Assembly (NCBI RefSeq): GCF_023055435.1
Contig: NW_025964212.1
Coordinates: 1,922,001 to 1,986,000, forward strand
Direction: 5' to 3'
DNA length: 64,000 bases
From: Haliotis rufescens
Taxonomy: Eukaryota
This document shows, one piece after another, positions 9,791 through 37,521 of this stretch. The notes under the pieces are model-generated. The model saw only the letters and a program-made list of their open reading frames with translations. It made no database searches and was not told the origin of the DNA. Position numbers and translations under genes: made by a program. Numbering within the stretch: the first letter of the stretch is position 1; each line of letters begins with the position of its first letter.

Positions 9791-12700
9791 TTAGTCTGAT
9801 GTTTGTTCATTGTCATCCTCCTTCTCAGCAACAACATTGTAAGGGTTCTCTTCGACAGGTTTAGGAGTCGTGTTCTCGTAGATGTTGTCAACCAATGACT
9901 TGTCTTCCGTGTTGCCGTTCAGGTGGTCGTAGGCGACGTCACGCTTGTCCTCATCAGTGTCCCGTGAAGCCGACTCCGTGGTGTCGTACGCCGAGTTGTC
10001 CGTGCCGATTTTGACCATACCGACCAAACATTTGTCATAACCATCACCCTTGTCCTGGTCAACTATCACGTGGCGAAGGTGATCATAGACGCCGACAGCA
10101 GACACGGATGGTGGCTCGTCGGCGAACTTGATGCGGTCGTATATGGGTTCGTCGGTTGATTTAGGTGGAGGGCGGACCTGGAGGGTCACAGACTTCTCAG
10201 AGGTTGTGTCAGGCTGTTGGATTGTCACGTTAAGTGTTTCACTGCAACCGCTCTGGGCGCGGAGCCTCCGCTCGACAGCTTCCTTGGAACAAGAGGCGTT
10301 CAAGGGAATTGTCTGAAGGTATTTTGTGACATTCGCCCTGGAATATAAGGGGTTAAATATATAAATCAGGAGTCACTGATATATACTACTAAATCTATGG
10401 TTAAGGACCACTCGATTATTTTAAATTACCATACTAGTTAATGTGTCATGGCATGGCAGATTAAGTACACTCAGTTATATGAGTGAGTGAGTGAGTTGGA
10501 TTTAACGCCACTTTTAACAGTATTCCAGTTATATCGCGGCGTGTCAGTGAGGAAAGTGATGCAGGTCTCAGACGTTTACCACTTCGGTGAAACCCACGAG
10601 CACGGGTATGGTGCTGACAAACCTAGAAACATAATCGGGGCGAACCGGGATTCGAACCCACAATCATAGGTTTCTGGCGTGCCCAAGGGACGCAACTCTG
10701 CACAGCGAATCGCGGCGCCTTAGACGACTGGGCCACCCGTGCCCCCAAGTAATATGAAAAACTCGAGCGTTCCCTAACTGTTTTAGCAGCATTCCACAAA
10801 CAACTTTGGCTTGGTGAAAACACAATTCATTTATTTGCTGAGGTTACATCTCATCCGAAGACTTGTCACAAATAATACGTGCATCCTGATTGTTCCAGAA
10901 AGGCAATTTCTTTGAAAGGCATTTAAAATTTTGAAGTTGGGGTACAAAGGATAAGAATTTATGGATGAACAACTTCTTTATTACAAGTAAGAGCGACGTT
11001 TCGGTGTAGGTTCTAACACCGTTATCCAGCAAGTGCTTGCTTGATAACGGTGTTAGAACCTACCCCGAGTTACGCCATTGCTCAGCTAGTGTTGATGTGA
11101 CTCGGTTCCTAACAGCAAAGCTTGCATTCGTCACCACTCGCTCCTTTCCGTAACCTGAAAGAAGACTCGTAACCCTATCGATAAATGTTATGTGCGAAAA
11201 TACGACAAACCAATCAGAATGCGCGTATGATTTCAAGATCTTCGTCAAAGAATCCCTGAGAAATAATTTTTGAATTTACATATGGCTTGCATCTAAAAAT
11301 ATACCCAAGACACAGTTAAATATGTTCAAGCATACTGTATAATTCCGCATGTCCCGATGTGCTTTAAATTGCATCTGAAATATACATAATATACGGGGAA
11401 ATATATATGAACCCTTACGCAAAGATTTGACAATTGTTTTAGGTATGCCCGTTTACGCTAAGACGGAACCCGGTCACAAAAATGGCCACGAGAGGGGCAC
11501 GAGTCGCTGTTCGGCTTGTCCCGGAATAACACGAGTTGGTCACGAATGCTTGAGCTTGGTGATGGGTGAAAGGTTGTTATCGGCCTGTGTGCAAAACCCC
11601 TGTCCGATATCATCTCGGGTACCGTCAGTCTTTCTGAACTATTTTTTTACTTAATTACACAAAAGTATAAGAAAGTGAGTTGTATTCAGAAAGAGTAAAT
11701 CAACAATACAAACTTGAACACCAATATGTAATTTGATGACATACTGCCCCATGGTGATTTAAAATGGCCAAATGACTTGTACAAACAGTATTACGTTTAA
11801 AGTGTTAACGCTCCATACAGACGTAACAGCGCTACTAGTGAGTGAGTGAGTATGGTTTTACGCCGCTTTTAGCAATATTCCAGCAATATCACGGCGGGCG
11901 GGCGGGCGGGGGGGAGACACCGGAAATGGGTTTCACACATTGTACCCATGTCGGGAATCGAACCCGGGTCTTCGGCGTGACGAGCGAACGCTTTAACCAC
12001 TAGGCTACCCGACCGCCCCAACAGCGCTACCAGCTCGGGTAGGTGTTGACAGACTGGATGGTTGTAGATGGAAATTATGTTGAAAACTTACCGCCTCTTC
12101 CAAATTATGACACCAGCCAAAACTGCAGCTAGGACCAACAGCACACCCACGCCCCCTATCACCGCCGTCACAGAGGCATTATCTGAAACGTCACAAAATG
12201 GATCAGTGGGTGAATTATGTTTTACGCCGCATGCAGCAATCTGCAAGTTAGTGGTTGATAGCATGAGCAACGATCACGCAGTCGGGACATGTGAGTTCGA
12301 TCCCACACTTTAACCACCTGATCCACAGATTCTGACAAGGGCGTTGTATCAGGGATCATTTTCCCCCTGATTCATTAGGTCGCCATGAGGTAGAACTACT
12401 CACTGAAAATTTAAGTAAAGTCACGCACAGCATGTTGATAAAGCACGTAATAGTTTACGGCTGAATATCAATTTATTTTGACATACTTCGATCAAAAACA
12501 ACCACACCCGTGAACATCCGGGGTAGAATAGGTCTTCAGCAACCCATGCTTGCCGTAAGAGGCGACTATGCTTGTCGTGAGAGGCGCCCGGGATCGGGTG
12601 GTCAGGCTCGCTGACTGGGTTGATGCATGTCATCCTACCCCAATTGCGTAGATCGTTAATGATGGTATCAATCACTGGATGGTCATGATCAGGTCCAGAC

Positions 12701-15700
12701 TCGATTACTAGTATTTATGTACCGCCGCCATATAGCTTGAATATTGCTTAGTGCGGCGTTAAACAGCAAACAAAAAAACAAAAAACCAGTCATGATCTAT
12801 CAACTGACATCGTTCAGTGACGAAACACCCCAAAAACCGTGTTAGTTATGTATTTTCACTGTTAGTGGATATTTTAATTATCTTTTGGTAATTTGGTATG
12901 ACTTTCTTCACAACTAGCTAAATTTGATATATATACCATGACAAATATACCAAATGCCCAATCATGTTAATTGTGTTATTAAATTACTGGTTATAGCAAA
13001 AATGAATTAGGAAATTATCTCAAAATTCATCAAGTACATATTCAATGGTATGAGTAAAGCCAAGTGTGTGTTTTTTTATGAACCTCCATCCGCGTGTATG
13101 TGGTGTACTCAAACATTTACAGTAGGAGTTAAAGATATGTTCATATATTTACCTGTAGTGTTGATAACCTTTCTATCACCAGAGGGCCAATCATCTCCCC
13201 ACCATGCTTTGAAAAAAAACAAATTTTAACTTTTTTAATTGTAACTGTAATAATAATTATTAATTAACAAAATTGTTTATTTATACTCTATATGTCAATG
13301 ATAGGAATGACAGTGTCTTACAAATGAATCAATCATTGATATCATTAGAGTAAGAATGTATCAACAGTATTGTTTTATGGTTAACAGTATGGTGTATAAT
13401 ACATGTGCTATACATACCATTTTCTAGAGATCCACAACGAAGTTCAAGTTCCGTGTCCTCTGAAAAAGATTATTATTAATATGTATTAATATGCGCCAAA
13501 TGTGTGCTGTTTCTAACATACATAAGATAGATATAACACAATTGACCCATTTGTATAACATTGTAAATACAACACTATAACGAATGTCGCTCTTGTACAA
13601 TAAATCAATTGGCGTTACTTTAATGTATAATAAATGTATAATAAGACATATGCATGTAAGCGACTAGCTACGCTGCTTTGGATCATCGATACTTGATACG
13701 GTACGAGTTCAATATTTAAAGGTCACAAAGTTATAAAGATGAAAAGCTGTAAACTTTTACACACCAGCTTCTACATGAATCCACACATATCCAGGAAGAT
13801 TTTCTGGAACTATGTTCAGAAGTAGGTCAATAGGGGTCAAGGACATTCCTATATTTGTTACCGAGGAGAGGAATGTTCGTCTTCCATACGGACCACAGGT
13901 GATATTGGTGACGTGACCTCCACTCTGCCGTATGAGGACACTTGAGCATATCCCTCCAATTTTGTCGAAGCGAACATCGAGAGCGTTGATGGTGACGTTG
14001 ACGGGGGTGGATGACGTTACTGGTTCCACTCTACATGAGAACTGTTTAACTTTGTCAGAGCTACGTATGTAGAGGTCAGGGTCAAAGGCAAGAAACACAG
14101 ACTTTCCTCGGGTTGAGCCAACAGTGTCAAAATCAACCATTTCCGTTTCTGTGTGGAAAGAAATTGTGGTCAAGAAATCATCATAATCATTTTGAAAGTG
14201 TCAACGATTTTACCTGTACTCTATTATAAAAAAATATGAACACAATGTACTTAATTAATAACAATAACGTTTAAACTCGAAAATTCGCAAAAAATGGGTT
14301 ACAATTTATATTATGTTATACTACTCAAAATAAGTTAAAGAACACCCGATTTTCTCATATGACAATAGTTTAACTGTCATATGAAAACATCGGGTGTTCT
14401 TCAACATCTTTTGAGTAGTATAAATCACAGAAACCCCGTAAGGTGGACGTTAACGCTCCCACTGAACGAAGCATTGTTAATACACCTTGTATAGGTGGGA
14501 AAAGTCGTCCGGAAAGCGGAGAGTCTGGAATATCGGGGTGTGGACTAAAAGAGGATTCACTTCAGCATGTGAGTCTTCATTAATAAGAATATTCCGTTGG
14601 CACATTTGTTAAATAAAGCTCAAGTCATGATTGTGACCCGATTGACATTTGAAATAAACTGAATAAATTTTTGTTCAAATATATAACCAAAGAGCTTTCA
14701 AGAAAGCCGTTTCAAAAAGGATATTCCAAAACAAAACTTATATCCCGTCTTGCTAAATTGACATGATGTCATTGTCACGTTACTGTTAAATACTAATATT
14801 TTAAACATCAGTATCAAAACTACATGAAAAAGCGTGAGTGAGTTAGGTTAAGGGCTCTTTTTCTACCATTTCAAATATTTCACGGCGTTGCATGAATAAA
14901 ATGGGGGGGGGGGGGGGGGGGGGGGACAAAATATGCTGAATGGTTAAACGTACACTTTTGACATTACCCGTCAACATGGTAATTACAGATAGTCTTCGAA
15001 CGCTAATTTAAAGCGTTGGTTAATTTCCAACCAAGGCCTACATTTTACGTTGACTATTTTCTCCACACCACACCACACTATTCACGAAAGTTACAACTCA
15101 AGGATATCACTGTGACGTATCAAGGTCACGTGTTCCTTTAGGTCTCCCAACCTTAGGGTATCGATCGATGGCTTCCTCGAAGCCGCGCCCTAGTAACATA
15201 CGGCCTTCGTGGTCTAGTGAAACAGAACGTCTTCCCGGTGAGTGGAATATCAGTGGTTCGATGCCCGGCCGCTTCATACCGTAAGACGTTAAAAGTTGGC
15301 ACTTGTTGTTACCTTGCCTGACGCTCGGTATTAAGGAAATAAAACTCGGACTTGTCGGCTCGTTGTCAGTATACTGTGTCAGAGTGTATTCATGTTAAAA
15401 CAGTGGCATGGTATATCGGGGGCAGGGATGTGTAGAAACGGCTTCATAATTAGTCGAGACAAGAACAAGGACACACACACACTCCAGCGCACGCATGCAC
15501 GCACGTACAATAAAATCCCGCCTCTACACCTGTTGACATACCTGATGACCTGATGACCTGCTTGCCGTAAAAGGCGACTATTCTTGTCGTAATAGGCGAC
15601 TAACGGGATCGGGTGGTCAGGCTCGCTGACTTGGTTGATGCAATCATCGTATCCCAATTGCGTGGATCGATGCTCATGATGTTAATCACTGGATTGTCTG

Positions 15701-17575
15701 GTCCAGACTCGATTATTTACAGACCGCCGTCATACAGCTGTAATAGTGCTGTGTGCGGCACTTAACAACAAACAAACACAGAAAAAACAGTCATGATCTA
15801 TCATACCCAAACCAAACATACCTGATATGCAGCTGAACCTGATCGACGAGAAGGATGACAGTGTACGCGTCGATAACGTGCACGCCTCCTGGACTCTGTC
15901 TGTGTAATAGGAACAGTTGTATTTGCCAGAACAGCGTTCATACAGGGACCTCATGTATATGTTCTTGAAGGGAAAGGTGCAGTCATACACGTCATCTTCT
16001 TTGCAGCAGAACTTGGTGTTGAACTTGCAGGTGTTGACGGCAATGCTTGGACAGAGAGACTCCTTCCTCTTGAAACCGTGGACAGCCGATATGATGGCCA
16101 GTCGGTCAGTCGTTCCACAGGTCAGTTCATGACGAGAACAGGGTCCCTGGCCGTAGCAGGCGTTAGACATGCCAAAATGAAAACCTGGTTTACATTAAGA
16201 CATGGGTTAGTAAATGTTGGTTCACATTATGAGTGAGTGAGTATGGTTTTAAGCCGCTTTTAGCAATATTCCAGTAATATCCTGGCGGGCGACATCAGAA
16301 ATGGGCTTCACACATCGTGGTGAATCGAGTCCGGGATTTCGGCGTGACGAAAGAACACATGCACTACTAGGCTACCCCAGGCTACGTCATTGATAAAATT
16401 ATTGCAACCATGCTACAACATCCTGTAAAGCGGTCAAATCTGGCCCAGACAAATTTGACCTAAGGAGGAAGTGGACATGTTTTCGGGGCACCATGATATA
16501 CAATCTGCCAAGTCACACACTGTAACCTCCCTATCCTCACCATCAGGCACTCGCGACAAGCAATGGGCATTCTGACCGAGTAAGACATGAGTTGGCGACG
16601 GCTGTATTATGACAGTAGTCGACGTACACCTTTAAAGGGGAAGTGTACACGCAAAAATCACTTTCTTTCTTTTTCTAAACAAAACGCAATTTTAGAATTA
16701 GTTAGTATCTGTGTTTGAAAATATACACTCATTTTTTTCACAGTGAAAGTAGGGAGCTCACAATCGTGTGAAAATGATATGGCGTTATGAGGCCTTCGTT
16801 TTTTCAAGCTAAACAGGCCTGAGTTATCTCCCTTAGATTATGACGTAATTGGTGCCATTTCAACTGGGTCCCTGTCTATTCTCAACGCAAAAGATATCAA
16901 GTACCAGTTTGCGGTAAAACAACATGGCCTACGACACACTCCGGCGCAGTGGTGACTCAGCATAACACTATGCTGGCTGGCATCTGAGACGCAAGAATCA
17001 CACGCCTGTACCTACACCACGTGAAGCGGCTCTAACAAAGCATGATGACGTCATAATGTTTATCAATTGGCACCAATGACGTCATATTGAAAGGGGCATA
17101 AGCCATGGTGTTTTTGTTATAGAAATAGAACACTTGATAAATGTGAAAAATATAAATAGTTTTAATGCGAAAAATATGTTAATTAATTGTGATATTTTTA
17201 TATTTTTGTCTATGACATTTCTAGGTTAACATTTTTAATGTGGAAAAAGTACAAGAAAAATAGGTTCATTTCCGTGTGAACTTGCCCTTTGAGGCCTTTG
17301 ACAATGTCGAATCTGGTCCACACAAGCCAATTGCTGACAGCAGGAGAAAGTGGTCATGTTGTTGGGGTTGTGAGCTCGATATTGTCAGCAGCACGGCTCC
17401 AATGAATACTACTACAACTACTACTGCTACTACTACAACTACTACTTCTACTACTACTACTGCTGCTGCTACTACTACCACTGCTACTATTACTACTACT
17501 ATTACTGCTACCACTTTCACTACCACGTCGTCTTGTACTCATACAAATACTGTTATTACTACTGCTACTTATACA

Positions 17576-17608
<33 letters not shown>

Positions 17609-17637
17609 GCCACTACCGTTACTACTTCTCCTCCTCT

Positions 17638-17673
<36 letters not shown>

Positions 17674-18038
17674 AGTACTACTACTACTGCTACTACTACT
17701 ACTTCTGCTTCCACCACTACAATTTTAACTACTACTACTAGAAACAACTACTACTATTACTAGAGTACTAGTAGTTCCACTACAACTGCTACTCCTACAA
17801 CTACTATTACTACGAATTACTAACTACTACAACTGCAACTACAACTATCACAGCTACTACTGCTTCTACTACTACCACTTCAACTACTGCTTCTACTATT
17901 GCTACCACTACTATATCTACGACTACCACTTCTACTATTACTACTGTTTCTACTACTGCTGCTACTACAACTGTACCTCATACTACTGCTACTACTACTT
18001 CTACTTCTTATAATACTTTATTACAGTTATTAACCCTG

Positions 18039-18087
<49 letters not shown>

Positions 18088-21000: not shown

Positions 21001-21784
21001 ACTTGACTGTACACTGTAGACATGTTCAGATATGTACTTGACTTACAATGTAGACATGTTCAGATATGTACTTGACTGTACACTGTAGACATGTTCAGAT
21101 ATGACTTGACTTACAATGTAGACATGTTCAGATATACATTTTGCAAATAGGTTTAAGGTTTCTTAAGATATACATGCTAACCAGCTGCTCACTTTAATAT
21201 ACCAATTAACAACTGGAACGACAGACGCACATATTCGGAATGGAAAAGGATCTAACGAATGCTAGAATGATAGATAAGATAGATAGAAGGATTGGTAGAA
21301 GAAAGTATTGAAGGATATGCATGACATATCGACGATTGATAGACGGATACACATAAGGATTGGTAGAGGTCAATATAGAACGATGTATAATGGCATATAG
21401 AAGATTGACAGACTTGTAGAAGAAAATACAGAATGGTAGAACGACAGATAAGATAATAGACGGATAGAAATATGATTGGTAGAAGGAAATATGGAAGAGT
21501 ATTCTAATACAAAGGAGAGCTTGACGAATAGATGTGTGGATTGTAGAAGGATAAATCAACGGGTAGAATTACACATCGAAAGGTACTGACAGATCGAAGG
21601 AATGACATACAAGTGTGAGATCCATCGAGGCATACACACATGAGCTAACGTTGTCGTATCGCTACAAATTATTGATATTAATTTCGTGAGACACATTGAG
21701 TAAACGTATGAAACTTATTTAACAATGCTTACCTGAACTTTGCCAAAATACTGCAAAAAGTATCACAATAACACAAGTGTCCAT
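9791..21784 (-). CDS. Receptor B: type I membrane protein, signal peptide + divergent SUEL/Gal-lectin-like domain + CUB-like domain + TM + Tyr-motif cytoplasmic tail (~510 aa)
   Basis: Seven exons with GT-AG boundaries and matching phases: 21784-21733 (MDTCVIVILFAVFWQSS), 16184-15822 (12-Cys domain), 14148-13765, 13459-13418 (EDTELELRCGSLEN), 13206-13153 (AWWGDDWPSGDRKVINTT), 12182-12092 (TM VIGGVGVLLVLAAVLAGVIIW then KRR), 10337-9791 (cytoplasmic, stop). The sum is 1533 nt, open throughout. Confidence 0.8.
10481..10746 (-). mobile_element. SINE family B copy
   Basis: Reverse-complement match to 5144-5417. Confidence 0.8.
11837..12019 (-). mobile_element. SINE family A copy with TSD
   Basis: Flanked by direct repeat AACAGCGCTAC (11825-11835 and 12020-12030). 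Confidence 0.85.
14321..14419. mobile_element. Palindromic Tc1-like MITE
   Basis: CTACTCAAAATAAGTTAAAGAACACCCGAT...ATCGGGTGTTCTTCAACATCTTTTGAGTAG; related half-elements at ~1210-1320 and ~8415-8480. Confidence 0.6.
16636..17288. mobile_element. Non-autonomous DNA transposon (Kolobok-like, TTAA target)
   Basis: TTAA-AGGGGAAGTGTACACG ... CGTGTGAACTTGCCCT-TTGA imperfect TIRs; internal inverted TGACGT..ATTGGTGCCA motifs. Confidence 0.55.
17405..18087. repeat. Degenerate (TAC/ACT)n trinucleotide microsatellite
   Basis: Visible directly; lies in intron 1 of receptor B. Confidence 0.95.
18679..18931 (+). mobile_element. SINE-like family C copy, head-to-head with an inverted copy at ~18436-18650
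   Basis: Full-length match to the family C consensus. Confidence 0.8.
20251..21137. repeat. 34-35-bp minisatellite (CTTGACTGTACACTGTAGACATGTTCAGATATGTA)n, ~25 copies
   Basis: Visible directly. Confidence 0.95.
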
Positions 21785-21926
21785 TGTTATGAGTTGCGGT
21801 GGGTGTTTATGTTTTATGGACAGACCTCTGATCCCAAGCTGAAGACGGAAGCATGACCCTGGGGCTACTGTGGCATGCGTTCAACTTTCCTCCTAATTAG
21901 TCCCCGTGAGCACCAAGTGCTTGACT

Positions 21927-25643: not shown

Positions 25644-28600
25644 TCAAAATATTTTTAAGCTTTCAACTGTTGTCTTAAACCCTGGGTTGTCGTAAAAATC
25701 TCCCGAAGGATTGTCCGAACTGCTATATGGCTTTCCAGCATTTGTGTACCCGTCTGAGTCTCTCGGTTGGCTTACTCGGGGCGGGGACGTATTAGGACCG
25801 CCATCAGAGGACGCAAGCAGTGCCCTTTCCTTTCTCCCCATCTGCCTGCCTCCACTCCGGCTGGTTGGCGTCTTTAGCGGGCTGTTATTGCTGGAGTTGT
25901 TTCCCTTGTGACCTTGACCTGGAGATGGTCCTCCTCTGGACGTGTCGTCTCTTTCCCTGTCTCCATCCGTCTTGTCCCACGAACGTTCTTCTCCATCGGG
26001 GATGTTGCGTTCTTCCTCAACTTTTCTACTTTGGTAACGCCTGTATCTTGAAGGAAAACATGGTCACAGCTTCAGGTCTGGGAGAGCGTAAAGAGAATAT
26101 TCAAATCAAATCCCCAATCTGCAATTAGCATAAACCAAGATAGACTACGTTTGCATATGTGTATATTCAGGCAAAACAGGCAAAACAAAAGATTAATAAT
26201 TACATAACAGCTATAATTGTGTTTCGTACTGACTATCATGTTTGTTTGTATTGTTTAACGCCGCACTCGGAAATCTTCTAACCATATGACCTCAGTCAGT
26301 AAATAATCGACATCATTTGTGTCAATCTGCGCAACTGGGATACGATGACATGCATCAACCAAGTCAGCGAGTCTGACCACCCGATCCCGTTAGTCGCCTC
26401 TTACAACAAGCATAGTCGTCTTTTACGGCAAGTATGGGTTGCTGAAGACCCATTCTACCCCGGATCTTCATGGGTCTCAGCAATATGTATTGCAGACACA
26501 TGTGGACATTAAAAGTAATCCAAATAAGTTCAACGCATATATTAACCTGTTATAACACATGACAATTCTTATCTATTTTCCATTCCAGCAATCAAAGGTC
26601 ATGCCTTTGGTGTCATGAATCGTGACATTTGTGGATGCCCTTACCCTCTGTTAGCAAACCGCGGCTCGCCAAAGTGAATACTCTACATCAAATGACAATA
26701 ATTGTGCCATCATTTGACCGACTAAATAAGCGTTTCAATTTCCATGGGAAGAATAGACTTCATTTGAAAACGCGACCCATTAAGTAGTTATTTTCCGTTT
26801 AGAATAACGAATACTGAGTGAAACATTGAGCTCCTAGTGTCAATGAAGAGACATATTCAAAACATATCAGAAATCATATCACAATTTTTCAATTATCATT
26901 ATGATAATAACTTGTTAGAAGGAACGATTTCCCGAGTCTTCTGTCCGCCGCAATTTGTTGTCTAGAATTTTGCTTCCCGTTAGCGTGACATAGCTATGAT
27001 ACTGGGTTCGAATCCCGTTCGCCCTGGTTTGTTTCGAGGTGTGTAGGCACCATGCCCGTGCTCTTTGATTTGTCTAAGTGATATACGTCTAAGACCTCAC
27101 TTCCGGCTTCCCCAAACACCCCCGTGCTATCTTGAAATATTATTGTTCAAAGCGGCGTTAAACCAAACTAACTCACCCAGAGACAACTGGAAAGTATGTA
27201 TCTTGTAATCTCTAAATGGACTGCAATGCACACTCGGGCATTAAGTAATAATGAGACATGGTTGGTGTATCTGACCTTCTCCTGCGGTAGCACAGGACGG
27301 CGACGATGACGATGATGATGAGAATCAACAGCAGGAGGCCGGTGGCAACCCCGCCGTAAGTTGCAGCGGAGTTGGATCCCGAGGCTGGAAGACCAAATAT
27401 TAAAAGAAAGAAAGAAAAATTATATAAACTGACGGGTAAAAAGAAAGTATACATTGAAAACTTTTTCTGACCAACAATTTACACACGCTATCCAAACGTT
27501 AATTGACTGAAAACATTGCAAACATGGCCCGAAACACAACTATAATATCCGTATCAATTACATCACCGTTCTAATAACCATTTCCTCCTTGTTGCATTAT
27601 TAGCGATCACCAAATATGGGTGGAGACATTTTGCCCGGTAGTTTACGTCTTTTAAACACATCCTCTAACAGGAAGTGATGAAATTTTCGTTACAGTGCCA
27701 CCATGAGTATGAATACTTTTTACCCGTTCCGACACATTTGTGACGTGGGCAATGGTTGTACAAGACAATGAACGACTTCTCTTTTTCCATATCAAAGGTC
27801 ATATATGCATCAGTCCAGCAGGTTCGTTGTGGTTAAAAGTGGAAAAATGTACGAAGAAATCTCTGCTGTATTGAAATTGTTTTTGCCTCGGCCGGTTTAT
27901 GAAATATCAAGTAGCATCACACGATAAAAACTGGGTATCTTGGTGTATCTTGAAAGAGACAGCGGAAGGACACAATATGAACCTGCATTTGAGTATGATT
28001 TTGATGGCATTCTCTATAGACATGAACACTAAGTACAGAATAACTTTCTTGTATTTATTTTGTTTTTTGTTCGTTCTGTAACTGAGAGTGAATCGGATTC
28101 AAACACTTGAATTATGACTCTTGCTATTAATGTGTTTGATTACTCAAGGCTTTGGTAAAGCCTTTTAAAAGGTTCAACAGTGTAGACACGTTAAGACCAT
28201 TTCCAAATCTGAATTTAGTGAAAGCGAGAGAATAGGGTCAGACAAGGGTCAGACAGGGGTCAGACAATGGTTTTATTGTATCATCAATCTTCTTTGGCAT
28301 CACACATAATAGTTGATGTCCTGACGCATTAAGTAAAATAATGAAGTGATTTGCATGTTTTTAAAGACAACAAGCAACAAGTAAGATTTTACGCACTCAA
28401 TCGGGACACAAAATGTCTTATGAGGTGTTTTACATACATTTTACGACTGTGGCACCTTCTTCTGTTTCCGGCACTGAGTTTGATACAGCTGCTGAAGTCA
28501 CGGCTTGGGAGCTGGGTGACGTGTCGCTGTTCGTTCTACTCGGCTCGGGAGTTGAATCCGGTTCTGGTTTCGTCTCTGGCAACGGCTCTGATGTTTGTGA

Positions 28601-31600
28601 CGTTGACGGAGAAGGTGTGCTTGACGGTATGCTTGCCACTGGTGAAAGCATTTGAATATTTGTCATGATCACAAGCCTCAAAAGGGGTCAACATGGCATA
28701 TTGCCATCGTGATTTTTTAGAGTTATATACTTCAAAAGTGAGGCTCTGCCGATATTAAGTCTGTCAATTCTATGTTTAAAAAAATGAATCACGAAGCCTT
28801 GTCAGAGCATTATAAAAAAAATTGATATTCCTAAGTGTAATATTTACGAGACGTAAATACAGGAGGTAAATAATCGTTTCATTATAATGTCATTCTTGGA
28901 GGAATTATATCTAAGCGTGAGAAATGGAAGTATGATGGACAACCGCTTGTGTGTGTACCTTTATAGAAATGCTTAGGATTAACGTTTAGGGGCTGTCGGG
29001 TAGCCTAGTGGTTAAAGCGTTAGCTCGTCACGCCGAAGACCCGGGTTCGATTCCCGACATGGGTACAATGTGTGAAGCCCATTTCTGGTGTCCCCCGCCG
29101 TGATATTGATGGAATATTGCTAAAAGCGGCGTAAAACCATATTCACTCACAAGGATTAACGTTTACTAAATCTCTATCATGGCCAAAACACGTAAAACAC
29201 ACTTCCTTGCAAGCTAAGAAGATTCTTCATGGTGTGTTAAAAGTTTATCAATACTTAAACCATTACCATTTCATTTATTTTGCAAAATATTTGACACCAA
29301 TATGAGCCCAATTTTACGTTTTGGTACACATATGCAAACGTAGTCTATCTTGGTTTATGCTAATTGCAGATTGGGGATTTGATTTGAATATTCTGTACAT
29401 ATGTTGGCCTGTATCCGCTTCCTGACTGTACAATCTACAACTTCAAATCATGTTGCTAGTGGTGAATGTGAAAGATACCCACTATATATTTATGCCTGTA
29501 AACGCGTTGTAAAATATTGGTGTAAAATTTTATATATGCCTGTCTCAAGGTTTTTGAGAAAATCCATACAAAATGCTGTTCACAATGGTTAAACAATCTG
29601 GGTTGGTTGGTTGTTTTACACCGCACTCAGCAATATTCCAGCTGTTTGACGGCATTAATGTATTAATGTCGTCCACTGACGAATACCCGATCAAAGACCT
29701 ATCAATGTACATCTGTAAAGAAATGAGTCCCCGACTACCTGTATTACCTTTGTATCATGGGCCTATGGCATTCAATATTGAATGTACCAAGTTGTTTGAT
29801 TGATATCTTTCTTAAAATATTCGTTCTTCAAGGTGTAACTTCAATCAATTGGGTAACTTTAGAAAGCACATATGAATAGAATCTTTGAGTGACCCTCCCC
29901 ATTTATCATATAGTGCCAGAATGTAAACCCCAGTTTACACCTAAGGAGAAAATAATGGTCAATACTTTAGTGAGCAAGAATGCACTGTATCCATGTATAG
30001 AACATGAAAGTAGTTCCTCCTTGATTGGTTGGTTGGTTTGTTGTTTGACGCCGCACTCAGCAATATTCCAGCTATATGACGGCGGTCTGTAAATAATCGA
30101 GTCTGGACCAGACAATCCAGTGATTGACATCATGAACATTGATCTACGCAGTTGGGATCGATGACATGCATCAACCAAGTCATCGAGTCTGACCACCTGA
30201 TCCCGTTAGTCGCCTTTTACGACACAGCGAAGTCGCCTTTTACGGCAAGCATGGGTTGCTGAAGACCTATTCTACCCTGGATCTTCGTGGGTCAAATCAA
30301 ACTGGGCCTCTAAAGATTGAAACTATCATACAATCAGGATTGGCATGGGGCGTTAACTGATAGCAGAAGTCATATAAATTTAACTTCAATACCAAATACT
30401 TTATCTCAGCCCTTACATGTCATAAATTTAGAAACGCGATGGCACACGTTAGTTGCAGTTTCCATCACCTAAGAATTGAATCAGGAAAATGTTCCAAAGA
30501 AAAGAGAGAAGATAGAATTTGTGTTATTTGTAAACCGAACTATATAGAAGGCGAATATCATTTTATTTTGATGTGTTAAACATATGATGATCTTAGAGCA
30601 AACCTAATAGCACAACATATTATACCTATGCTACTAGACACACGTTTAATGTATTAATGTCGTCCACTGACGAATACCCCATCAAAGACCTATCAATGTA
30701 CATCTGTAAAGAATATCATTTTATTTTGATGTGTTAAACATAATTATGATGATCTTAGAGCAAAACTAATAGCACAACATATTATACCTATGCTATTAGA
30801 CACACGTTTAAAGTATTAATGTCGTCCACTGACGAATATACCATCAAAGACCTATCAATGTACACCTGTAAAGAATATCATTTTATTTTGATGTGTTAAA
30901 CATAATTATGATGATCTTAGAGCAAGACTCATAGCACAACATATTATACCTATGCTACTAGACACACGTTTAATGTATTAATGTCGTCCACTGACGAATA
31001 CCCCATCAAAGACCTATCAATGTACACCTGTAAAGAATATCATTTTATTTTGATGTGTTAAACATAATTATGATGATCTTAGAGCAAAACTAATAGCACA
31101 ACATATTATACCTATGCTACTAGACACACGTTTAATGTATTAATGTCGTCCACTGACGAATACCCCATCAAAGACCTATCAATGTACATCTGTAAAGAAT
31201 ATCATTTTATTTTGATGTGTTAAACATAATTATGATGATCTTAGAGCAAAACTAATAGCACAACATATTATACCTATGCTATTAGACACACGTTTAAAGT
31301 ATTAATGTCGTCCACTGACGAATATACCATCAAAGACCTATCAATGTACACCTGTAAAGAATATCATTTTATTTTGATGTGTTAAACATAATTATGATGA
31401 TCTTAGAGCAAGACTCATAGCACAACATATTATACCTATGCTACTAGACACACGTTTAATGTATTAATGTCGTCCACTGACGAATACCCAATCAAAGACC
31501 TATCAATGTACATCTGTAAAGAATATCATTTTATTTTGATGTGTTAAACATAATTATGATGATCTTAGAGCAAAACTAATAGCACAACATATTATACCTA

Positions 31601-34600
31601 TGCTACTAGACACACGTTTAATGTATTAATGTCGTCCACTGACGAATACCCCATCAAAGACCTATCAATGTACATCTGTACAGAATATCATTTTATTTTG
31701 TTTTGTTAAACATAATTATGATGATCTAAGAGCAAAACTAATAGCGCAACATATTATACCTATGCTACTAGACACACGTTTAATGTATTAATGTCGTCCA
31801 CTGACGAATACCCGATCAAAGACCTATCAATGTACATCTGTACAGAATATCATTTTGTTTGATGTGTTAAACAGAATTATGATGATCTTAGAGCAGAACT
31901 AATAGCACAACATATTATACCTATGCTATTAGACACACGTTTAAAGTATTAATGTCGTCCACTGACGAATACCCCATCAAAGACCTATCAATGTACATCT
32001 GTACAGAATATCATTTTGTTTGATGTGTTAAACAGAATTATGATGATCTTAGAGCAGAACTAATAGCACAACATATTATACCTATGCTATTAGACACACG
32101 TTTAAAGTATTAATGTCGTCCACTGACGAATACCCCATCAAAGACCTATCAATGTACATCTGTACAGAATATCATTTTGTTTGATGTGTTAAATAGAATT
32201 ATGATGATCTTAGAGCAGAACTAATAGCACAACATATTATACCTATGCTATTAGACACACGTTTAAAGTATTAATGTCGTCCACTGACGAATACCCCATC
32301 AAAGACCTATCAATGTACATCTGTACAGAATATCATTTTGTTTGATGTGTTAAACATAATTATGATGATCTTAGAGCAAAACTAATAGCAGATCATATAA
32401 TACCTATGCTACTAGACACACGTTTAATGTATTAATGTCGTCCACTGACGAATACCCCATCAAATACCTATCAATGTACATTTATAAAGAATATCATTTT
32501 ATTTTGATGTGTTAAACATAATTATGATGATCTTAGAGTAAAACTAATAGCGCAACATATTATACCTATGCTACTAGACACACGTTTAATGTATTAATGT
32601 CGTCCACTGACGAATACCCCATCAAAGACCTATCAATGTACATCTGTACAGAATATCATTTTGTTTGATGTGTTAAACATAATTATGATGATCTTAGAGC
32701 AGAACTAATAGCAGATCATATTATACCTATGCTACTAGGCACACGTTTAATGTATTAATGTCGTCCACTGACGAATACCCGATCAAAGACCTATCAATGT
32801 ACATCTGTAAAGAAATGAGTCCCCGACTACCTGTATTACCTTTGTATCATGGGCCTATGGCATTCAATATTGAATGTACCAAGTTGTTTGATTGATATCT
32901 TTCTTAAAATATTCGTTCTTCAAGGTGTAACTTCAATCAATTGGGTAACTTTAGAAAGCACATATGAATAGAATCTTTGAGTGACCCTCCCCATTTATCA
33001 TATAGTGCCAGAATGTAAACCCCAGTTTACACCTAAGGAGAAAATAATGGTCAATACTTTAGTGAGCAAGAATGCACTGTATCCATGTATAGAACATGAA
33101 AGTAGTTCCTCCTTGATTGGTTGGTTGGTTTGTTGTTTGACGCCGCACTCAGCAATATTCCAGCTATATGACGGCGGTCTGTAAATAATCGAGTCTGGAC
33201 CAGACAATCCAGTGATTGATATCATGAGCATCGATCCACGCAATTGGGATCAATGACATGCATCAACCAAGTCATCGAGCCTGACCACCCGATCCCGTTA
33301 GTCGCCTTTTACGACAAGCATAGTCGCCTTTTACGGCAAGCATGGGTTGCTGTTCAAAGACCTATTCTACCCCGGAATCTTCACGGGTCTCCTCCTTGAT
33401 CACTTCGTTTTCACATGTGTTAATCGCATCGATAACACTGTCCATTGTTTGATGAAAGTGAATATCATTGTTCTTTATTCTACACAATATCAATGGAGAC
33501 AATGCACCTTTACTTCCTATTCTGCCTTGTGCCACTGTATTCGGGGGTCGTGTTCTCTGAGTGAGTGAGTGAGTGAGTGGCCGCTGTATTCGGGGGTCTG
33601 AGTGAGTGAGTGAGTGAGTGACTATGGTTTTACGCCGCTTTTAGCAATATTCCAGCAATATCAAGGCGGGGGACACCACAAATGGGCTTCACAGATTGTA
33701 CCCATGTCGGGAATCGAACCCGGGTCTTCGGCGTGACGAGCTAACGCTTTAACCTCTAAGCTACCTGACCGCCCCTGTGTTCTCTGAAGGTGTCATGTCC
33801 TAAAACGGAAATATTCACTGTAATCAGTTCTACCTTACCTGTTGTTGACGTGGCGCTCGACCCCGAGGTTGGTGTTGTTGATTGGGTAGACTGAGTTGTA
33901 GAGGATGCTGATGTTGTTTGTGTCGACGTCAAGGTAGACGATCCAGTTGTCGTAGACGTAGAAAGTGGTACTTTGCGGGTCTCACGTATTTTACCGCAAT
34001 CAACGGTAATATTCCCTCTACCTAAAAACCATTAAAATGTTTAATACGATTGTGTTGCTTAGGAGATGCATACACTTTGCTTTCCATAGAGTTAGAGCTA
34101 ACTTATATTGACAAACGAACGCGCAGCGAACTCTTTGGTGTCACCTAAGGTATAGAGTGATTTTGTTTGTTTGTTTGTTTGTTGTTTGACGCCGCACTCA
34201 GTAAAATTCCAGCTAAATGACGGCGGTCCGTAAATAATAGATTCTGGACCACAAAATCCAGTGTTTGACATCACGAGCATCGATCAACGCAATTGGGATA
34301 CGATGACATGCATCAACCAAGTCAGTGAACCTGACCACCCGGTCCTGTTAGTCGCCTCTTACAACAAGCATAGTCGCCTTTTACGGCAATCATGGGTTGC
34401 TGAAGACCTATTCTACCCCAAATCCAGTATGTGTATCTCTACCCGGATCGGTCTGGGACGTATTGAGTGAAGAGGTGTGGGTTGATGTCAGTGTTTTTGT
34501 TGTATATCCGAATTAATTAAACACCGAGAACAGCCTTTAAACAAAGCATGCCGCTGTATATGCTCAAACATTATTTTCTTTCCACAATTATACTTTACTT

Positions 34601-37521
34601 GCATATAATACGGGCATTGAATTTGTGGAGCACAGCTACATGTACTTCGAAAGAACACATGAAGTTGGCACCCTATACAAAAGAAACATTAGCAAATCGT
34701 GTTAGGTTCTACACCCCACGTCACTATTATGACGTCACATCGAAGATTGTTGTGACGCAAAATATATGAGTCACAGTGGTCTGTAGAAAAGAACAAAATT
34801 TCAGGCTCCATCATAATACAGATGGTGTTCACATGGTCAAAAAATATATAAGGTATTAAATTAGCTGAATTAGGTAATTGCGCAAAACCTTAAAAACACC
34901 AACATGAAATCTTTCGAGGACGCGCTTATTAAGGATGTCTGCATCGAAATCAATTAATTTTGAAGGATAAGTATTTTCCTTTCAAAATAATAAACTCTAA
35001 CTGCCCAAAATGAAATGCAGAAGAGTTCCTGTACATTTTACCGCTTTAGGTGCACTTCAACCAAGTCAGCGAGCCTGACCACCCGATCCCGTTAGTTGCC
35101 TCTTACGACAAGCATAGTCGCCTTTTACGGCAAGCAAGAAGACCTATTCTACCCCAAATCCAGTATGTGTAATAAATATTCGGGACATTAAGTAATGCAC
35201 ATTAAAAGTAAGTGACCCTGTATATAAAATTTTATACATTTTGTACACAATAATAGAATAGGTCATACCAAAGGATGTGCCGGATTCTACTTGAGTGTTT
35301 TCCCCAAGAAGAACAGTGTTTGTTGTGATTAATGACATTCCTTATGCCAGTAAATGCACGACAATATTCATGAAAGTTTCAACTTGTCTCAAAAAAAGTC
35401 GATAATACCCATAACGAATAGCAAGAGACAAACCACCTGAGAACATATATGGTAGTACAAATAGTTAGACATTTGGTAACACAATATGGACATGGATTCG
35501 GATATTGTGTTGGAGCAAATAAAATCGAAGCTCTATATGCATAATCGAAATATATCACTATCAAATAGTGATGATCCCAGGTGTTCGCGAAATGGTTCAC
35601 TCATCCTGCCCCATGAGCCACAGCCGTCATAAAGCTTGAATATTGCTGAGTTCGGCGTTAAACAACAAACAAACCCATGAGCCACACCCGTCACAAACAC
35701 ATGCAAAGGCATGTCAAGCGGTCACCGAAAAATATGGTACAAGTCAAAATTGAGAATTTGCATCAAATTTGGAACATTTCTGCCATAACGCTTATGTCAT
35801 CTCTTACGACCAGCATAATTATATGTCCAGGACGTATTCAAATCCGAAAAACCAATTGGGCGTGTGGTCGGGCTCTTAATTACATTAAGCTCCACTGGTT
35901 ATATTTCAAAGCAAACATACCGTCGGTAACTCACGACACAACGCAGACTCACGGTGCCTACCTTCCAAAAGGACCCAAGCAGCCTGAGGCGGAGTCCCTC
36001 CTACGTCAACTATATTAACAGCAATAGGAACAGCACCATCATACAGCGTTGCTAAGAATCTCAGGTCTGTCCTCTCGCAGGAAAATATAGTCACATCTCC
36101 CTCTTTGTCTATTTCCAATCCTGAACAAGGTCCTCCATTCACGGACACCATTGACACGTCCAGCGCCCTGACCTTGACATTTGCGCCTTCCGGTCCAGTG
36201 ACGTCACATCCGTATACATTTGCTGTTCCTTGTTTCGTCTTGGTGATGGGAATCCGATAGAGTAGATACACTAAGTTGTTGGTGATCTGTGTCTCGACAT
36301 CATAACCGATGATGAGAGTATCTGGATAAATAGACAAAATATGTTGTGCTGAGATTCGGTCTTCAGAGAATTGCCTCGGGGAATACACGTTCAAATATTA
36401 ATGGTGTTTATACATTAACAGTAGTTCGAACATTTTGTGGAAATGTATCTTAATACATCTCTGTACGACGAAGCATACAGACGTTGAACAGGTTCATTTG
36501 GATGCAGGGAAATGATATCTTGTTTCAGATACTCGATCCACAAAACGACAAGAATTAAAATAGTATTGATTTTAAGGCGATCTAAAGTAAACGGTGTCGA
36601 TCATTTAATATTCTGTTGGGATAATGGGGCCTGGGTCATTGTTTGTGGAGACAATGTTTCTTGGTACATGTAATTGTTTCCAGGCATACAAAACGTTTTC
36701 TCCTAATGTATGGTCGAACAATTACATGTTTTTTGTTTGTTTTTTTCCAGGACATCAAACATGGCCAGAGAACAATTATTCAGAAACTGTGACAAAGTAA
36801 TTATGCCATTATGAATACATTTTGTGCTCAATAATAGTCGAAGTCACACAGAAGGATATTCTGGATTCTGCAACAATTAGTTCAGGAAGTGCAGTGTTTG
36901 TTATCGTTGTTGACGCTTGCCGTTTAAATATCGAATGATGGTCGATGCCAAAACCAATAATAATTATTTTGTATCAGAATTAGTCTTCAGCAACCCATGT
37001 TTGTCGTAAGAGGCGACTAACGGGATCGATGGTCAGGCTCGCTGACTTGGTTGTGTCATGTCATCAAAATGCTTTTGATCTTACCTAAAAACCTTAACTA
37101 AAAATCTTAACTAAAAATCTTAACTAAAAATCTTAACTAAAAATCTTACCTAACACACAACGATGAGACACCACAGAGAATGTTGACACAGGAAGTTTCA
37201 GTTGACCACAGTTCTGGTTCTTTTGTGGCGTCATATGGTCACAGGAGCGAGACCCTAAACACGAACGAAGAAGCCTGTCTGCATCAACCCCGGTGTAAGG
37301 CTTGTAACACTGGCGTCCAGTGCGCTTGCAGCAGGCATTGATGTAGCGGTCACTACAAGAGGACAGCTTGCCTCTGGTGCAGGTCGTGGTTCTGGACTGA
37401 TGAGCGTAGAGGGCATCGGTCACTACCACAGTGTGACCTACTGGACAGGACATAGTGTGTTGACCACATCTATTGACATTGCTGTAACACGCGCTTGTTT
37501 CTGTGTCCTTGCCGTGGGATA
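25644..37521 (-). CDS. Receptor C: paralogous type I membrane protein, SUEL-like + CUB-like + Ser/Thr/Pro mucin stalk + TM + cytoplasmic tail; signal-peptide exon not located
   Basis: Exons 37521-37150 (12-Cys domain), 36321-35962 (alternative in-frame donor at 35953), 34021-33839 (GRGNITVDCG + Thr/Ser stalk), 28638-28438 (S/P/T/E stalk), 27384-27276 (TM YGGVATGLLLLILIIIVIVAVLCY then RRR), 26046-25644 (ends DFYDNPGFKTTVESLKIF*). Phases 1-1-1-1-2 are consistent; same Cys pattern and ALDV / W-x3-E motifs as receptor B. Confidence 0.8.
28989..29151 (+). mobile_element. SINE family A copy with TSD
   Basis: Flanked by AGGATTAACGTTTA (28975-28988 and 29152-29165). Confidence 0.85.
30553..32811. 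repeat. 161-162-bp satellite array, ~14 copies
   Basis: The unit start GAATATCATTTT(A)TTTTGATGTGTTAAAC recurs at 30711, 30873, 31035, 31197 and onward. Confidence 0.95.

What the first reader, a model, noticed from the sequence alone, without database searches (positions are those of the whole stretch)
9791..37521. Tandem pair of unusual 12-Cys SUEL-like + CUB-like receptors with contrasting stalks and tails (paired-receptor architecture)
Seen: two same-strand genes whose first ectodomain shares a 12-Cys pattern (ACY..C..C..C..C..CC..C..CxG..C..C..S.FS.....C) and whose second domain shares V-x-V/I-x-ALDV, W-x3-E and 4 Cys split over the same phase-1 introns, although otherwise highly diverged. 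Known: canonical SUEL/rhamnose-binding lectin domains have 8 Cys with YGR, DPC and KYL sugar-binding motifs; here these read HGF/YAH, EAC/QNC and SFS/TFS, so sugar binding is probably altered. Receptor B has a short stalk and 7 Tyr motifs; receptor C has a ~120-aa mucin stalk and a tail ending FYDNPGF (NPxF/Y endocytosis-like). Inference: a signalling versus uptake/decoy receptor pair from a family I do not recognise as characterised.
Basis: partly seen in the sequence, partly recalled or inferred. Interest (0 to 1): 0.78.

Follow-up and report, generated by a model that had tools for sequence, protein, structure and literature searches.

The report
Two abalone lectin-CUB membrane receptor genes
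Two neighbouring abalone genes encode cell-surface proteins with a sugar-lectin-like domain and a CUB domain outside the cell and different docking tails inside; they belong to an unstudied family found across snails and bivalves, but they are not a matched on/off receptor pair.

Summary
Two minus-strand genes lie head to tail in an abalone (Haliotis) genome: B at 21784-9791 and C at 38700-25644. Each encodes signal peptide, a 12-Cys domain, a second domain split by a phase-1 intron, stalk, one membrane helix and a tail.

The domain calls hold too.
- Pfam is silent on the window's exons.
- A profile of 11 abalone copies of domain 1 hits Pfam-positive SUEL-lectin proteins.
- My domain-2 profile falls on a Pfam-positive CUB domain in Lingula.
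- AlphaFold models of near-identical or orthologous public proteins match SUEL/rhamnose-lectin and CUB structures.
- Spliced contigs from four runs join B's exons at the predicted sites.

The YGR/DPC/KYL motifs are replaced.

The "paired receptor" reading is not supported. B and C share only 21-27% ectodomain identity. Neither has a closer copy in the genome (best 35%). Neither membrane helix carries a charged residue.

They are old paralogues of an uncharacterised family; every named member of this architecture is a mollusc. B's tail has three copies of the family motif Y-[DNS]-[HRKQ]-[LIV]; C has only YDNPGF.

The scan had already noted this family on other DNA of this genome.

The parts
21733..21784 (-). 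Gene B exon 1: start codon and signal peptide; ends in phase 1
   Evidence: tblastn of H. cracherodii XP_071113781.1 (P0002), residues 1-20 at 90% identity. ATG and GT donor read.
15822..16184 (-). Gene B exon 2: 12-Cys SUEL/rhamnose-lectin-fold domain (D1); phase-1 introns on both sides
   Evidence: Sequence read. 100% identical to P0002. Spliced contigs in 4 of 4 runs. Fold matches ADGRL3 lectin Z 7.9, CSL3 7.7, SUL-I 7.7.
13765..14148 (-). Gene B exon 3: main part of the CUB-fold domain (D2), 3 Cys
   Evidence: The 17 top VIA rows are all CUB-bearing chains, Z 8.1-9.4.
13418..13459 (-). Gene B exon 4: 14 codons holding the last CUB strand and the fourth Cys
   Evidence: Splice sites read. 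Modelled as strand 271-277 of D2. Needed to fill the 96 nt between the D2 and membrane-helix pieces of the contigs.
13153..13206 (-). Gene B exon 5: optional 18-codon juxtamembrane exon (isoform X1 of the public orthologue)
   Evidence: 42 + 54 nt equals the 96 nt present in the contigs of all 4 runs.
12092..12182 (-). Gene B exon 6: transmembrane helix without a charged residue, then KRR; ends in phase 2
   Evidence: Helix 284-317 in the model.
9791..10337 (-). Gene B exon 7: cytoplasmic tail with YDRI, YDHL, YDKC, YDTT, YDHL, YENT and YNVV, then the stop codon
   Evidence: 100% identical to P0002. Motif counts.
38628..38700 (-).
   Evidence: tblastn of H. rubra XP_046547997.1 (P0005), residues 1-22 at 73% identity. 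Sequence read.
37150..37521 (-). Gene C exon 2: 12-Cys SUEL/rhamnose-lectin-fold domain
   Evidence: 82% identical to P0005. Orthologue model matches latrophilin lectin Z 7.9, SUL-I 7.5, CSL3 7.4.
35962..36321 (-). Gene C exon 3: main part of the CUB-fold domain
   Evidence: 76% identical. The 19 top VIA rows are all CUB-bearing chains, Z 8.1-10.2.
33839..34021 (-). Gene C exon 4: last CUB strand with the fourth Cys, then the first part of the Ser/Thr-rich stalk
28438..28638 (-). Gene C exon 5: second part of the Ser/Thr/Pro-rich stalk
27276..27384 (-). Gene C exon 6: transmembrane helix without a charged residue, then RRRR
   Evidence: Helix 402-443 in the orthologue model.
25644..26040 (-). 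Gene C exon 7: cytoplasmic tail with YDNPGF near its end, then the stop codon; the best-conserved part of C against H. rubra (91%)

Best explanation
B and C are two neighbouring, anciently diverged members of a family of single-pass (type I) membrane glycoproteins whose named members are all molluscs.

Shown:
- The outer part is a fixed two-domain cassette. The first domain has a SUEL/rhamnose-lectin fold, 12 conserved Cys, and its canonical sugar-contact motifs replaced. It is directly followed by a CUB domain.
- A stalk follows. It is short in B and a mucin-like stretch of about 120 residues in C.
- Then come one membrane helix and a disordered tail.

Inferred:
- The cassette binds an extracellular ligand. 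A protein ligand seems more likely than the classical rhamnose/galactose ligand, as in the latrophilin and EVA-1 lectin domains and most CUB domains.
- The tail recruits adaptor proteins.
- B keeps three copies of the family's recurrent motif Y-[DNS]-[HRKQ]-[LIV], plus a YxN site. It would therefore act as a phosphotyrosine docking scaffold for SH2 adaptors.
- C has lost these motifs and carries only a [FY]xNPx[FY]-type site. That fits PTB-adaptor binding or clathrin uptake.

They are not a matched activating/inhibitory pair.
For: Genes are real
- Spliced contigs in 4 of 4 runs from 4 studies join B's exons exactly at the predicted sites.
- Exon lengths sum to 1533 nt for B (one terminal stop) and 1695 nt for C. 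All junctions are AG/GT.
- Public orthologue models have the same exon structure.

Constraint on B
- 9 of 9 differences in the domain-1 exon among the four runs are synonymous. In the domain-2 exon 4 of 8 are synonymous.

Domain 1 is SUEL-like
- A profile of 11 abalone copies gives 258 hits at E<=1e-3 in 1.84 billion proteins.
- The best hit (E 2e-41) is a protein with 16 Pfam SUEL_Lectin repeats, E 2.5e-283.
- The Lingula hit P0008 is Pfam SUEL_Lectin at E 6.4e-24 over the same residues.
- Fold matches: Z 7.4-7.9 to ADGRL3/ADGRL1 lectin, CSL3 and SUL-I; Foldseek probability 1.00 to 8djg_F.

Domain 2 is CUB
- My domain-2 HMM hits Lingula P0161 at 1092-1189, where Pfam CUB scores 34.6 bits against a cut-off of 21.4.
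- The 17 (B) and 19 (C orthologue) top structural rows are all CUB-bearing chains.

Family
- 55 of 161 stored proteins carry domain 2.
- Named members of the D1-D2-membrane architecture come from 17 mollusc genera.

Tails (32 tails)
- Y[DNS][HRKQ][LIV]: 28 occurrences in 16 of 32 tails, against 2.5 +/- 1.6 in shuffles (0 of 500 shuffles reach it).
- Yxx[LIVM]: 114 against 55.
- YxxP: 45 against 22.
- NPx[YF]: 7 in 6 of 32 tails, against 2.0 (3 of 500 shuffles reach it).
Against: - No ligand, phosphorylation, tissue or localisation data were available.
- The runs are coded and are only guessed to be RNA. The spliced form is what argues that they are RNA.
- The models were made from public orthologues: P0002 is 98-100% identical to B per exon, and P0005 is 67-91% identical to C. 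They were not made from the window's own joined exons.
- The domain-1 Z scores (7.4-7.9) lie in the range the tool calls 'middling'.
- Pfam reaches its cut-off on none of the window's exons. Only 1 of 36 family members matches SUEL weakly and 1 of 36 matches CUB weakly.
- Tail-motif counts come from related proteins and are not independent events.
- ITIM (13 observed against 13.1 in shuffles) and ITAM (3 against 0.8) are not clearly enriched.
- YxxL/I is also the AP-2 sorting signal, so B's motifs could mean trafficking rather than SH2 signalling.
- Loss of YGR/DPC/KYL does not prove loss of sugar binding.
Confidence: 0.45

Rival explanations
1. They are a paired receptor system. B and C would recognise the same ligand with related ectodomains and give opposite outputs: signalling against decoy or uptake.
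For: - The genes are adjacent, on the same strand, and share the same domain order.
- The tails differ sharply: B has 3 family YxxL/I motifs plus YxN, while C has none of these and only YDNPGF.
- Sisterhood of B and C is not rejected (AU p 0.40).
Against: - Ectodomain identity is 21% and 27%, far from the near-identity that defines paired receptors.
- No near-identical partner exists anywhere in the assembly; the best is 35%.
- Neither membrane helix has the charged residue needed to couple to an adaptor.
- In the tree C groups, weakly (SH-aLRT 86), with another paralogue.
- ITIM and ITAM patterns are not enriched.
Confidence: 0.07
2. They are membrane-bound pattern-recognition lectins. Domain 1 would still bind microbial or self glycans through a remodelled site, and the receptors would trigger immune uptake or signalling in haemocytes.
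For: - Domain 1 has the SUEL/rhamnose-lectin fold.
- A passage of PMC8878817 reports a bivalve SUEL-type lectin that agglutinates Gram-negative bacteria through LPS.
- The family is expanded: 14 domain-1 loci at E<0.1 in this genome, taking together.
- NPxY/F plus YxxL tails recall engulfment receptors of the CED-1/Draper type (recalled, not tested).
Against: - The three motifs tied to sugar contact are all replaced in both genes.
- B's domain 1 shows 9 of 9 synonymous differences, which is not the diversifying pattern common in immune recognition domains.
- No expression data are available.
Confidence: 0.2
3. They are adhesion or guidance co-receptors. The lectin-like domain would bind a conserved protein partner, as latrophilin's lectin domain binds teneurin and EVA-1 binds Slit. 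The YDx[LIV] tail motifs would recruit Nck/Crk-type adaptors to actin, as nephrin's YDxV motifs do.
For: - The best domain-1 structural matches are latrophilin lectin domains, including two entries that are teneurin complexes (6vhh, 6ska).
- B's domain 1 is strongly conserved.
- Asp at +1 is enriched 2.1-fold and Leu/Ile at +3 about 2.5-fold around 338 tail Tyr.
- The title of Blasutig et al. 2008 on phosphorylated YDXV motifs and Nck was seen in a reference list.
Against: - Structural similarity does not show a shared ligand.
- SH2 specificity cannot be read from a 4-residue motif.
- C lacks these motifs.
Confidence: 0.2

Closest known systems
SUEL / rhamnose-binding lectin domains (Pfam PF02140; sea-urchin egg lectin, fish CSL3, SUL-I, latrophilin lectin domain)
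   Same: - Same fold (Z 7.4-7.9, 86-92 residues aligned).
- Detectable homology through profiles.
- Shared core Cys and the hydrophobic 'IAI..A.Y' strand.
   Different: - 12 Cys instead of 8: an added N-terminal C-Y-G...C pair and a CC...C group, features also seen in Lingula repeats.
- YGR, DPC and KYL are replaced.
- Below Pfam's cut-off.
- Sits on a membrane protein in front of a CUB domain.
CUB domains (Pfam PF00431; spermadhesins, C1s/MASP, neuropilin, TSG-6, Kremen)
   Same: - Same beta-sandwich (Z 8.1-10.2, about 100-109 residues aligned at rmsd 2.4-3.3).
- Linked by sequence through a Pfam-positive Lingula relative.
   Different: - Below Pfam's cut-off in the window.
- The four Cys are spaced differently: one sits early in the domain and one on the last strand, encoded by the next exon.
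- The calcium-site residues were not examined.
CDCP1 and DCBLD1/2 (vertebrate CUB-domain scaffold receptors with multi-tyrosine tails) and nephrin (YDxV motifs); resemblance recalled, not tested
   Same: Single-pass membrane proteins with CUB or adhesion ectodomains and disordered tails carrying several YxxP or YDx-hydrophobic docking sites. Enrichment of such sites in this family is measured.
   Different: - No sequence relationship was found or sought beyond the CUB fold.
- Different partner domains.
- No phosphorylation data here.
EVA-1 / EVA1C (two SUEL domains plus a membrane helix)
   Same: SUEL-type domain on a single-pass membrane protein with a non-sugar, protein ligand (recalled).
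   Different: - EVA-1 has two SUEL domains and no CUB.
- The only trace of its FAM176 region is a sub-threshold hit over C's membrane helix (E 0.024), which I take as membrane-helix composition.
Paired immune receptors (KIR, LILR, Ly49, PILR type)
   Same: Neighbouring genes of one family with different tails.
   Different: - Ectodomains are only 21-27% identical.
- No charged residue in the membrane helix.
- No enrichment of ITIM or ITAM.

Membership tests
SUEL / rhamnose-binding lectin domain (PF02140) | Characteristic alpha/beta fold of about 95-100 residues | tested here: met
   - VIA Z 7.9 (ADGRL3 lectin), 7.7 (CSL3) and 7.7 (SUL-I) for B's near-identical orthologue.
- Z 7.9, 7.5 and 7.4 for C's orthologue.
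- Foldseek probability 1.00 to 8djg_F.
- The tool warns that Z under 8 alone is middling.
SUEL / rhamnose-binding lectin domain (PF02140) | Sequence homology to family members | tested here: met
   - The abalone-only profile hits a 16-repeat Pfam SUEL protein at E 2e-41 and Lingula SUEL proteins at E 1.9e-21.
- The window's exons themselves score nothing in Pfam.
- A profile against PDB latrophilin lectin sequences gives only E 0.014-0.47.
   - 12 Cys.
- The motif columns read HGF/EAC/SFS in B and YAH/QNC/TFS in C.
SUEL / rhamnose-binding lectin domain (PF02140) | Binding of L-rhamnose or D-galactosides | not testable with these tools
   Needs a glycan array or sugar-inhibition assays.
CUB domain (PF00431) | Beta-sandwich fold of about 110 residues | tested here: met
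   - The 17 top rows for B are all CUB-bearing chains, Z 8.1-9.4.
- The 19 top rows for the C orthologue are all CUB-bearing chains, Z 8.1-10.2.
CUB domain (PF00431) | Sequence match to the family model | tested here: inconclusive
   - No hit on the window's exons.
- 1 of 36 family members at E 0.002.
- The Lingula relative passes the cut-off (34.6 against 21.4 bits) where my domain-2 HMM also matches.
CUB domain (PF00431) | Four Cys in two neighbouring disulfides; calcium-binding acidic residues in many members (recalled) | not tested
   Four Cys are present but with different spacing. Disulfide pairing and the calcium site could not be read, because model coordinates are not returned.
Paired (activating/inhibitory) receptors | Near-identical ectodomains in the two partners | tested here: not met
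   - 21% and 27% identity between B and C.
- The best other copy in the genome is 35% or 32% identical.
Paired (activating/inhibitory) receptors | One partner with an ITIM tail, the other with a short tail and a charged membrane-helix residue | tested here: not met
   - Both tails are long (about 130-190 residues).
- Neither membrane helix has a charged residue.
- B has one ITIM-like VAYDHL.
- ITIM is not enriched in the family (13 observed against 13.1 expected).
Mollusc SUEL-CUB-membrane family (unnamed; this report) | Signal peptide, 12-Cys D1, D2, stalk, one membrane helix and a Tyr-rich tail, in that order | tested here: met
   - Both genes show this order.
- The 36 aligned members were chosen for this order, and their D1 Cys columns are conserved.

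The most novel reading that the evidence does not exclude
The SUEL-like/CUB cassette family would be a mollusc-wide class of phosphotyrosine scaffold receptors. The lectin-like domain would have been converted to a protein-binding module. The conserved Y-D/N/S-H/R/K/Q-L/I/V and YxxP sites would recruit Nck/Crk-type adaptors. That would make it an invertebrate counterpart of nephrin, CDCP1 and DCBLD2. B would be a signalling member and C a mucin-stalked member diverted to PTB-adaptor-driven uptake.
Probability: 0.15. Interest if true: 0.6.

Novelty: new variant of a known kind. Interest (0 to 1): 0.36.

Why it matters
Molluscs have many lineage-specific surface receptors, and almost none has a known ligand or signalling route. 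This report gives exact gene models for two of them. It also shows what their two outer domains are, although Pfam misses both.

It places them in a family present in both snails and bivalves. It identifies a recurrent tail motif that can be tested with phosphopeptide pull-downs.

It also removes an attractive but unsupported label, "paired receptor", which the scan has now proposed more than once for this family.

Tried and rejected
Searches that gave little or nothing
- Pfam on the ten window ORF pieces gave no SUEL or CUB hit even at E<=10.
- A profile of the 11 abalone D1 copies against PDB sequences gave one meaningless hit at E 0.71.
- The full-family profile against PDB sequences gave latrophilin lectin domains only at E 0.014-0.47. 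It gave no CUB. The many other hits are membrane-helix look-alikes.
- Foldseek with the whole B model was noisy. Top rows at rmsd 14-25 A were Cry toxins and birnavirus capsids, which I discarded as multi-domain artefacts. I relied on VIA-align and on the Foldseek rows with sensible target coverage.
- The ESM Atlas gave scores of 0.76-0.80, below its own 0.9 lead level, although two of the three rows were SUEL clusters.
- The search for homologous proteins with C's domain-2 exon found nothing. The length window makes this blank uninformative.

Ideas considered and dropped
- B and C as sister genes: not recovered in the tree, not rejected by the AU test, so left open.
- ITAM and ITIM readings of the tails: rejected as family features.
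- The weak FAM176 (EVA1) hit on C's membrane helix: judged to be membrane-helix composition.
- Pseudogene or mis-joined exons for B: rejected by the spliced contigs and by 9 of 9 synonymous differences in D1.

Limits
- Supplementary files of papers were not consulted. None bears on a claim here.
- I did not search or fold a joined spliced model of the window's exons. Full-length work used public proteins returned by the tools.

Full report
**What is there**

The window is a piece of an abalone genome (G000 contig C434, 1.33 Gb assembly). The closest public proteins come from Haliotis cracherodii, H. rufescens and H. rubra.

Both genes lie on the minus strand, head to tail, with C upstream of B.

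Gene B has seven coding exons: 21784-21733, 16184-15822, 14148-13765, 13459-13418, 13206-13153, 12182-12092 and 10337-9791.
- They were placed by tblastn of the H. cracherodii proteins P0002 and P0151. Per-exon identities were 100% for domain 1, 97.7% for domain 2 and 100% for the tail.
- I read the AG/GT sites directly.

Gene C has seven coding exons: 38700-38628, 37521-37150, 36321-35962, 34021-33839, 28638-28438, 27384-27276 and 26040-25644.
- They were placed with the H. rubra protein P0005, which RefSeq names 'mucin-5AC-like'. Identities were 82% for D1, 76% for D2, 83% and 67% for the stalk, 84% for the membrane helix and 91% for the tail.
- I read the splice sites directly.

Exon lengths sum to 1533 nt (B) and 1695 nt (C), both multiples of three. 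The introns flanking the ectodomain exons are phase 1.

**Are the exons one transcript?**

For B, yes. I laid contigs of four runs from four studies on 10200-16190. In each run one contig carries these pieces back to back:
- 16187/16190-15822;
- 14148-13765;
- 96 further letters, which equal the 42-nt plus the 54-nt exon;
- 12182-12091;
- 10336-10200.

X5 is the exception: two overlapping contigs cover the same junctions. The runs are only guessed to be RNA. A form without 1.2-1.9 kb introns argues that they are.

Its model rests on the orthologue, the splice sites and the open frame.

**The shared pattern**

- B and C domain 1 each have 12 Cys and align at 24/116 identities, E 2e-8.
- Domain 2 aligns at 37/136 identities, E 6e-6. 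It shares V-x-[IV]-x-ALDV and W-x3-E.
- The fourth Cys of domain 2 sits on the next exon in both genes.
- In a 36-protein family alignment the 12 domain-1 Cys columns are invariant or at least 90% conserved.

**What the domains are**

Pfam reports nothing relevant on the window's exons. Only 1 of 36 family members gives a weak SUEL hit and 1 of 36 a weak CUB hit.

Homology nevertheless shows through profiles.
- An alignment of 11 abalone D1 copies was searched against 1.84 billion representatives. It gave 258 hits at E<=1e-3, 57 at E<=1e-10 and 2 at E<=1e-30.
- The top hit (E 2e-41) is a Dimorphilus protein with 16 Pfam SUEL_Lectin repeats, E 2.5e-283.
- Lingula P0008 (E 1.9e-21) is Pfam SUEL_Lectin at E 6.4e-24 over the same residues.
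- An iterated HMM of domain 2, run locally on the 161 stored proteins, found it in 55 of them. In Lingula P0161 its match at 1092-1189 coincides with a Pfam CUB hit that passes the cut-off: 1075-1178, 34.6 against 21.4 bits.

AlphaFold models point the same way. I built them from the public proteins, each with a 36-row family alignment.
- Both ectodomains are confident: block means are mostly 84-97 for B and for the C orthologue.
- In an all-against-48,161-chains structural search, the 17 best rows for B (Z 8.1-9.4) and the 19 best for C (Z 8.1-10.2) are all CUB-bearing chains aligned to domain 2.
- Domain 1 matches latrophilin lectin domains, CSL3 and SUL-I at Z 7.4-7.9.
- Foldseek gives probability 1.00 to the ADGRL3 lectin domain.
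- The domain-1 Z values alone are middling by the tool's own note. Together with the profile links I take the assignment as sound.

**Sugar motifs**

I aligned B and the C orthologue to the D1 HMM together with the canonical Dimorphilus repeats.
- The canonical repeats read ...AVYGR...GDPC...FKYL...
- B reads HGF, EAC and SFS at those columns. C reads YAH, QNC and TFS.

The Lingula repeats are Pfam-positive. They already carry the extra N-terminal C-Y-G and the CC...C group, and they have lost DPC and KYL. The 12-Cys form is therefore an old subtype, not an abalone oddity.

I did not test it.

**The family**

Within this genome, together give 14 domain-1 loci at E<0.1. They lie on C434 (the two here), C445 (ten), C423 and C24.

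Elsewhere, the named proteins with the D1-D2-membrane order come from:
- gastropods: Haliotis, Lottia, Gigantopelta, Biomphalaria, Elysia, Nucella, Littorina and Batillaria;
- bivalves: Dreissena, Mya, Mizuhopecten, Argopecten, Sinanodonta and Potamilus.

Pecten, Lottia, unionids and Lingula also have proteins with two to four cassettes.

All names are 'uncharacterized', 'hypothetical' or automatic labels such as 'CUB domain-containing' or 'SUEL-type lectin domain-containing'.

Four literature searches found no study of this architecture. I read passages of PMC8878817, which state that the role of SUEL lectins in lophotrochozoans remains elusive.

Two earlier notes of this scan describe the same family on other DNA of this genome. 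One calls it abalone-only, which my results contradict.

**Paired receptor?**

No, for the following reasons.
- The ectodomains are 21-27% identical.
- The best other copy in the assembly is 35% for either domain 1 and 32% for B's domain 2. C's domain 2 has none.
- Both tails are long, and neither membrane helix has a charged residue.
- On a quick maximum-likelihood tree of the ectodomains (36 rows, very long branches), C joins H. rufescens LOC124145164 at SH-aLRT 86 and B is unresolved.
- The AU test does not reject a B+C clade (p 0.40). An old tandem duplication therefore remains possible.

**Tails**

In 32 family tails with 338 Tyr:
- Asp is enriched at +1 (2.1-fold), His at +2 (3.0-fold), and Leu, Ile or Pro at +3 (2.1-2.5-fold);
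- Y[DNS][HRKQ][LIV] occurs 28 times in 16 of 32 tails, against 2.5 +/- 1.6 in 500 shuffles, none of which reaches 28;
- Yxx[LIVM] occurs 114 times against 55;
- YxxP occurs 45 times against 22;
- NPx[YF] occurs 7 times in 6 of 32 tails against 2.0, and 3 of 500 shuffles reach it;
- ITIM occurs 13 times against 13.1, and ITAM 3 times against 0.8, with 21 of 500 shuffles reaching it.

The tails are from related proteins, so these are not independent events.

B has YDRI, YDHL and YDHL (the family motif three times) plus YENT. C has none of them and only YDNPGF. C's tail is its best-conserved part against H. rubra, at 91%.

The YDx-hydrophobic form resembles the YDxV sites of nephrin that bind Nck. 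I saw only the title of Blasutig et al. 2008 in a reference list; the rest is recalled.

**Constraint**

One search printed 20 single-letter differences between the four runs' contigs and the window in B's exons. One search classified them:
- domain-1 exon: 9 of 9 synonymous;
- domain-2 exon: 4 of 8 synonymous;
- membrane-helix exon: 0 of 1 synonymous;
- covered part of the tail: 2 of 2 synonymous.

The counts are small. They still argue for strong purifying selection on B's lectin-like domain and against diversifying recognition.

**Verdict**

- The anatomy is confirmed and refined.
- The domain assignments are supported.
- The family is real and widespread in molluscs, and I found no study of it.
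- The pairing idea fails its defining tests.
- Function remains inferred: a surface receptor whose SUEL-like/CUB cassette binds an unknown, probably protein, ligand, and whose tail docks SH2 adaptors (B) or PTB/endocytic adaptors (C).
- This is a new variant of known kinds and of moderate interest.

Noticed in passing
window 30421-32958: A satellite array of about 161-162-bp units, at least 15 head-to-tail copies at 93-100% identity among the close ones. It lies inside the 5.2-kb intron between C's two stalk exons.
   Followed up: partly
window 29655-29954 and 32747-33046: A 100% identical direct repeat spaced 3092 bp that brackets the satellite array. Identical 67-aa ORFs at 29889-30092 and 32981-33184 belong to it. 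It could be a recent segmental duplication or an assembly effect.
   Followed up: partly
window 26094-26163 and 29325-29394: A perfect 70-nt inverted repeat whose arms flank C's second stalk exon and membrane-helix exon, as another first-stage note says. A second pair, 163 nt and 94% complementary, lies at 28988-29150 and 33614-33776.
   Followed up: partly
window 10400-10800, 11800-12200, 12400-12800, 15400-15800 (B introns); similar copies at 26345-26444, 30161-30260, 33253-33352: High-copy interspersed repeats. They share a recurring pseudo-ORF beginning MTCINQVSEPDHPIPLVA, and summed contig depth over these stretches of B's introns in the four runs is about 10,000 to 1,000,000.
   Followed up: no
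window 17266-17763: A long Thr/Val/Tyr-coding low-complexity microsatellite in B's first intron. It is open in several frames and is not part of either gene by the orthologue mapping.
   Followed up: no
window 37090-37148: A short tandem repeat of a 13-nt unit starts right at the donor site of C's domain-1 exon.
   Followed up: no
G000 C445:44257749-44314521 (loci L006, L007, L010, L011): A sub-family in which domain 1 has lost the CC...C group and one more Cys, leaving 8-10 Cys per copy as extracted. In the related public protein P0010 the domain is followed directly by a membrane helix without a CUB domain, and by a tail rich in D-Y-D motifs.
   Followed up: partly
G000 C594:47326493-47329765 (loci L014-L019): Several weak domain-1 matches (E 0.5-2.7) inside long open frames of 387-735 aa. 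This may be a multi-repeat canonical SUEL protein gene.
   Followed up: no
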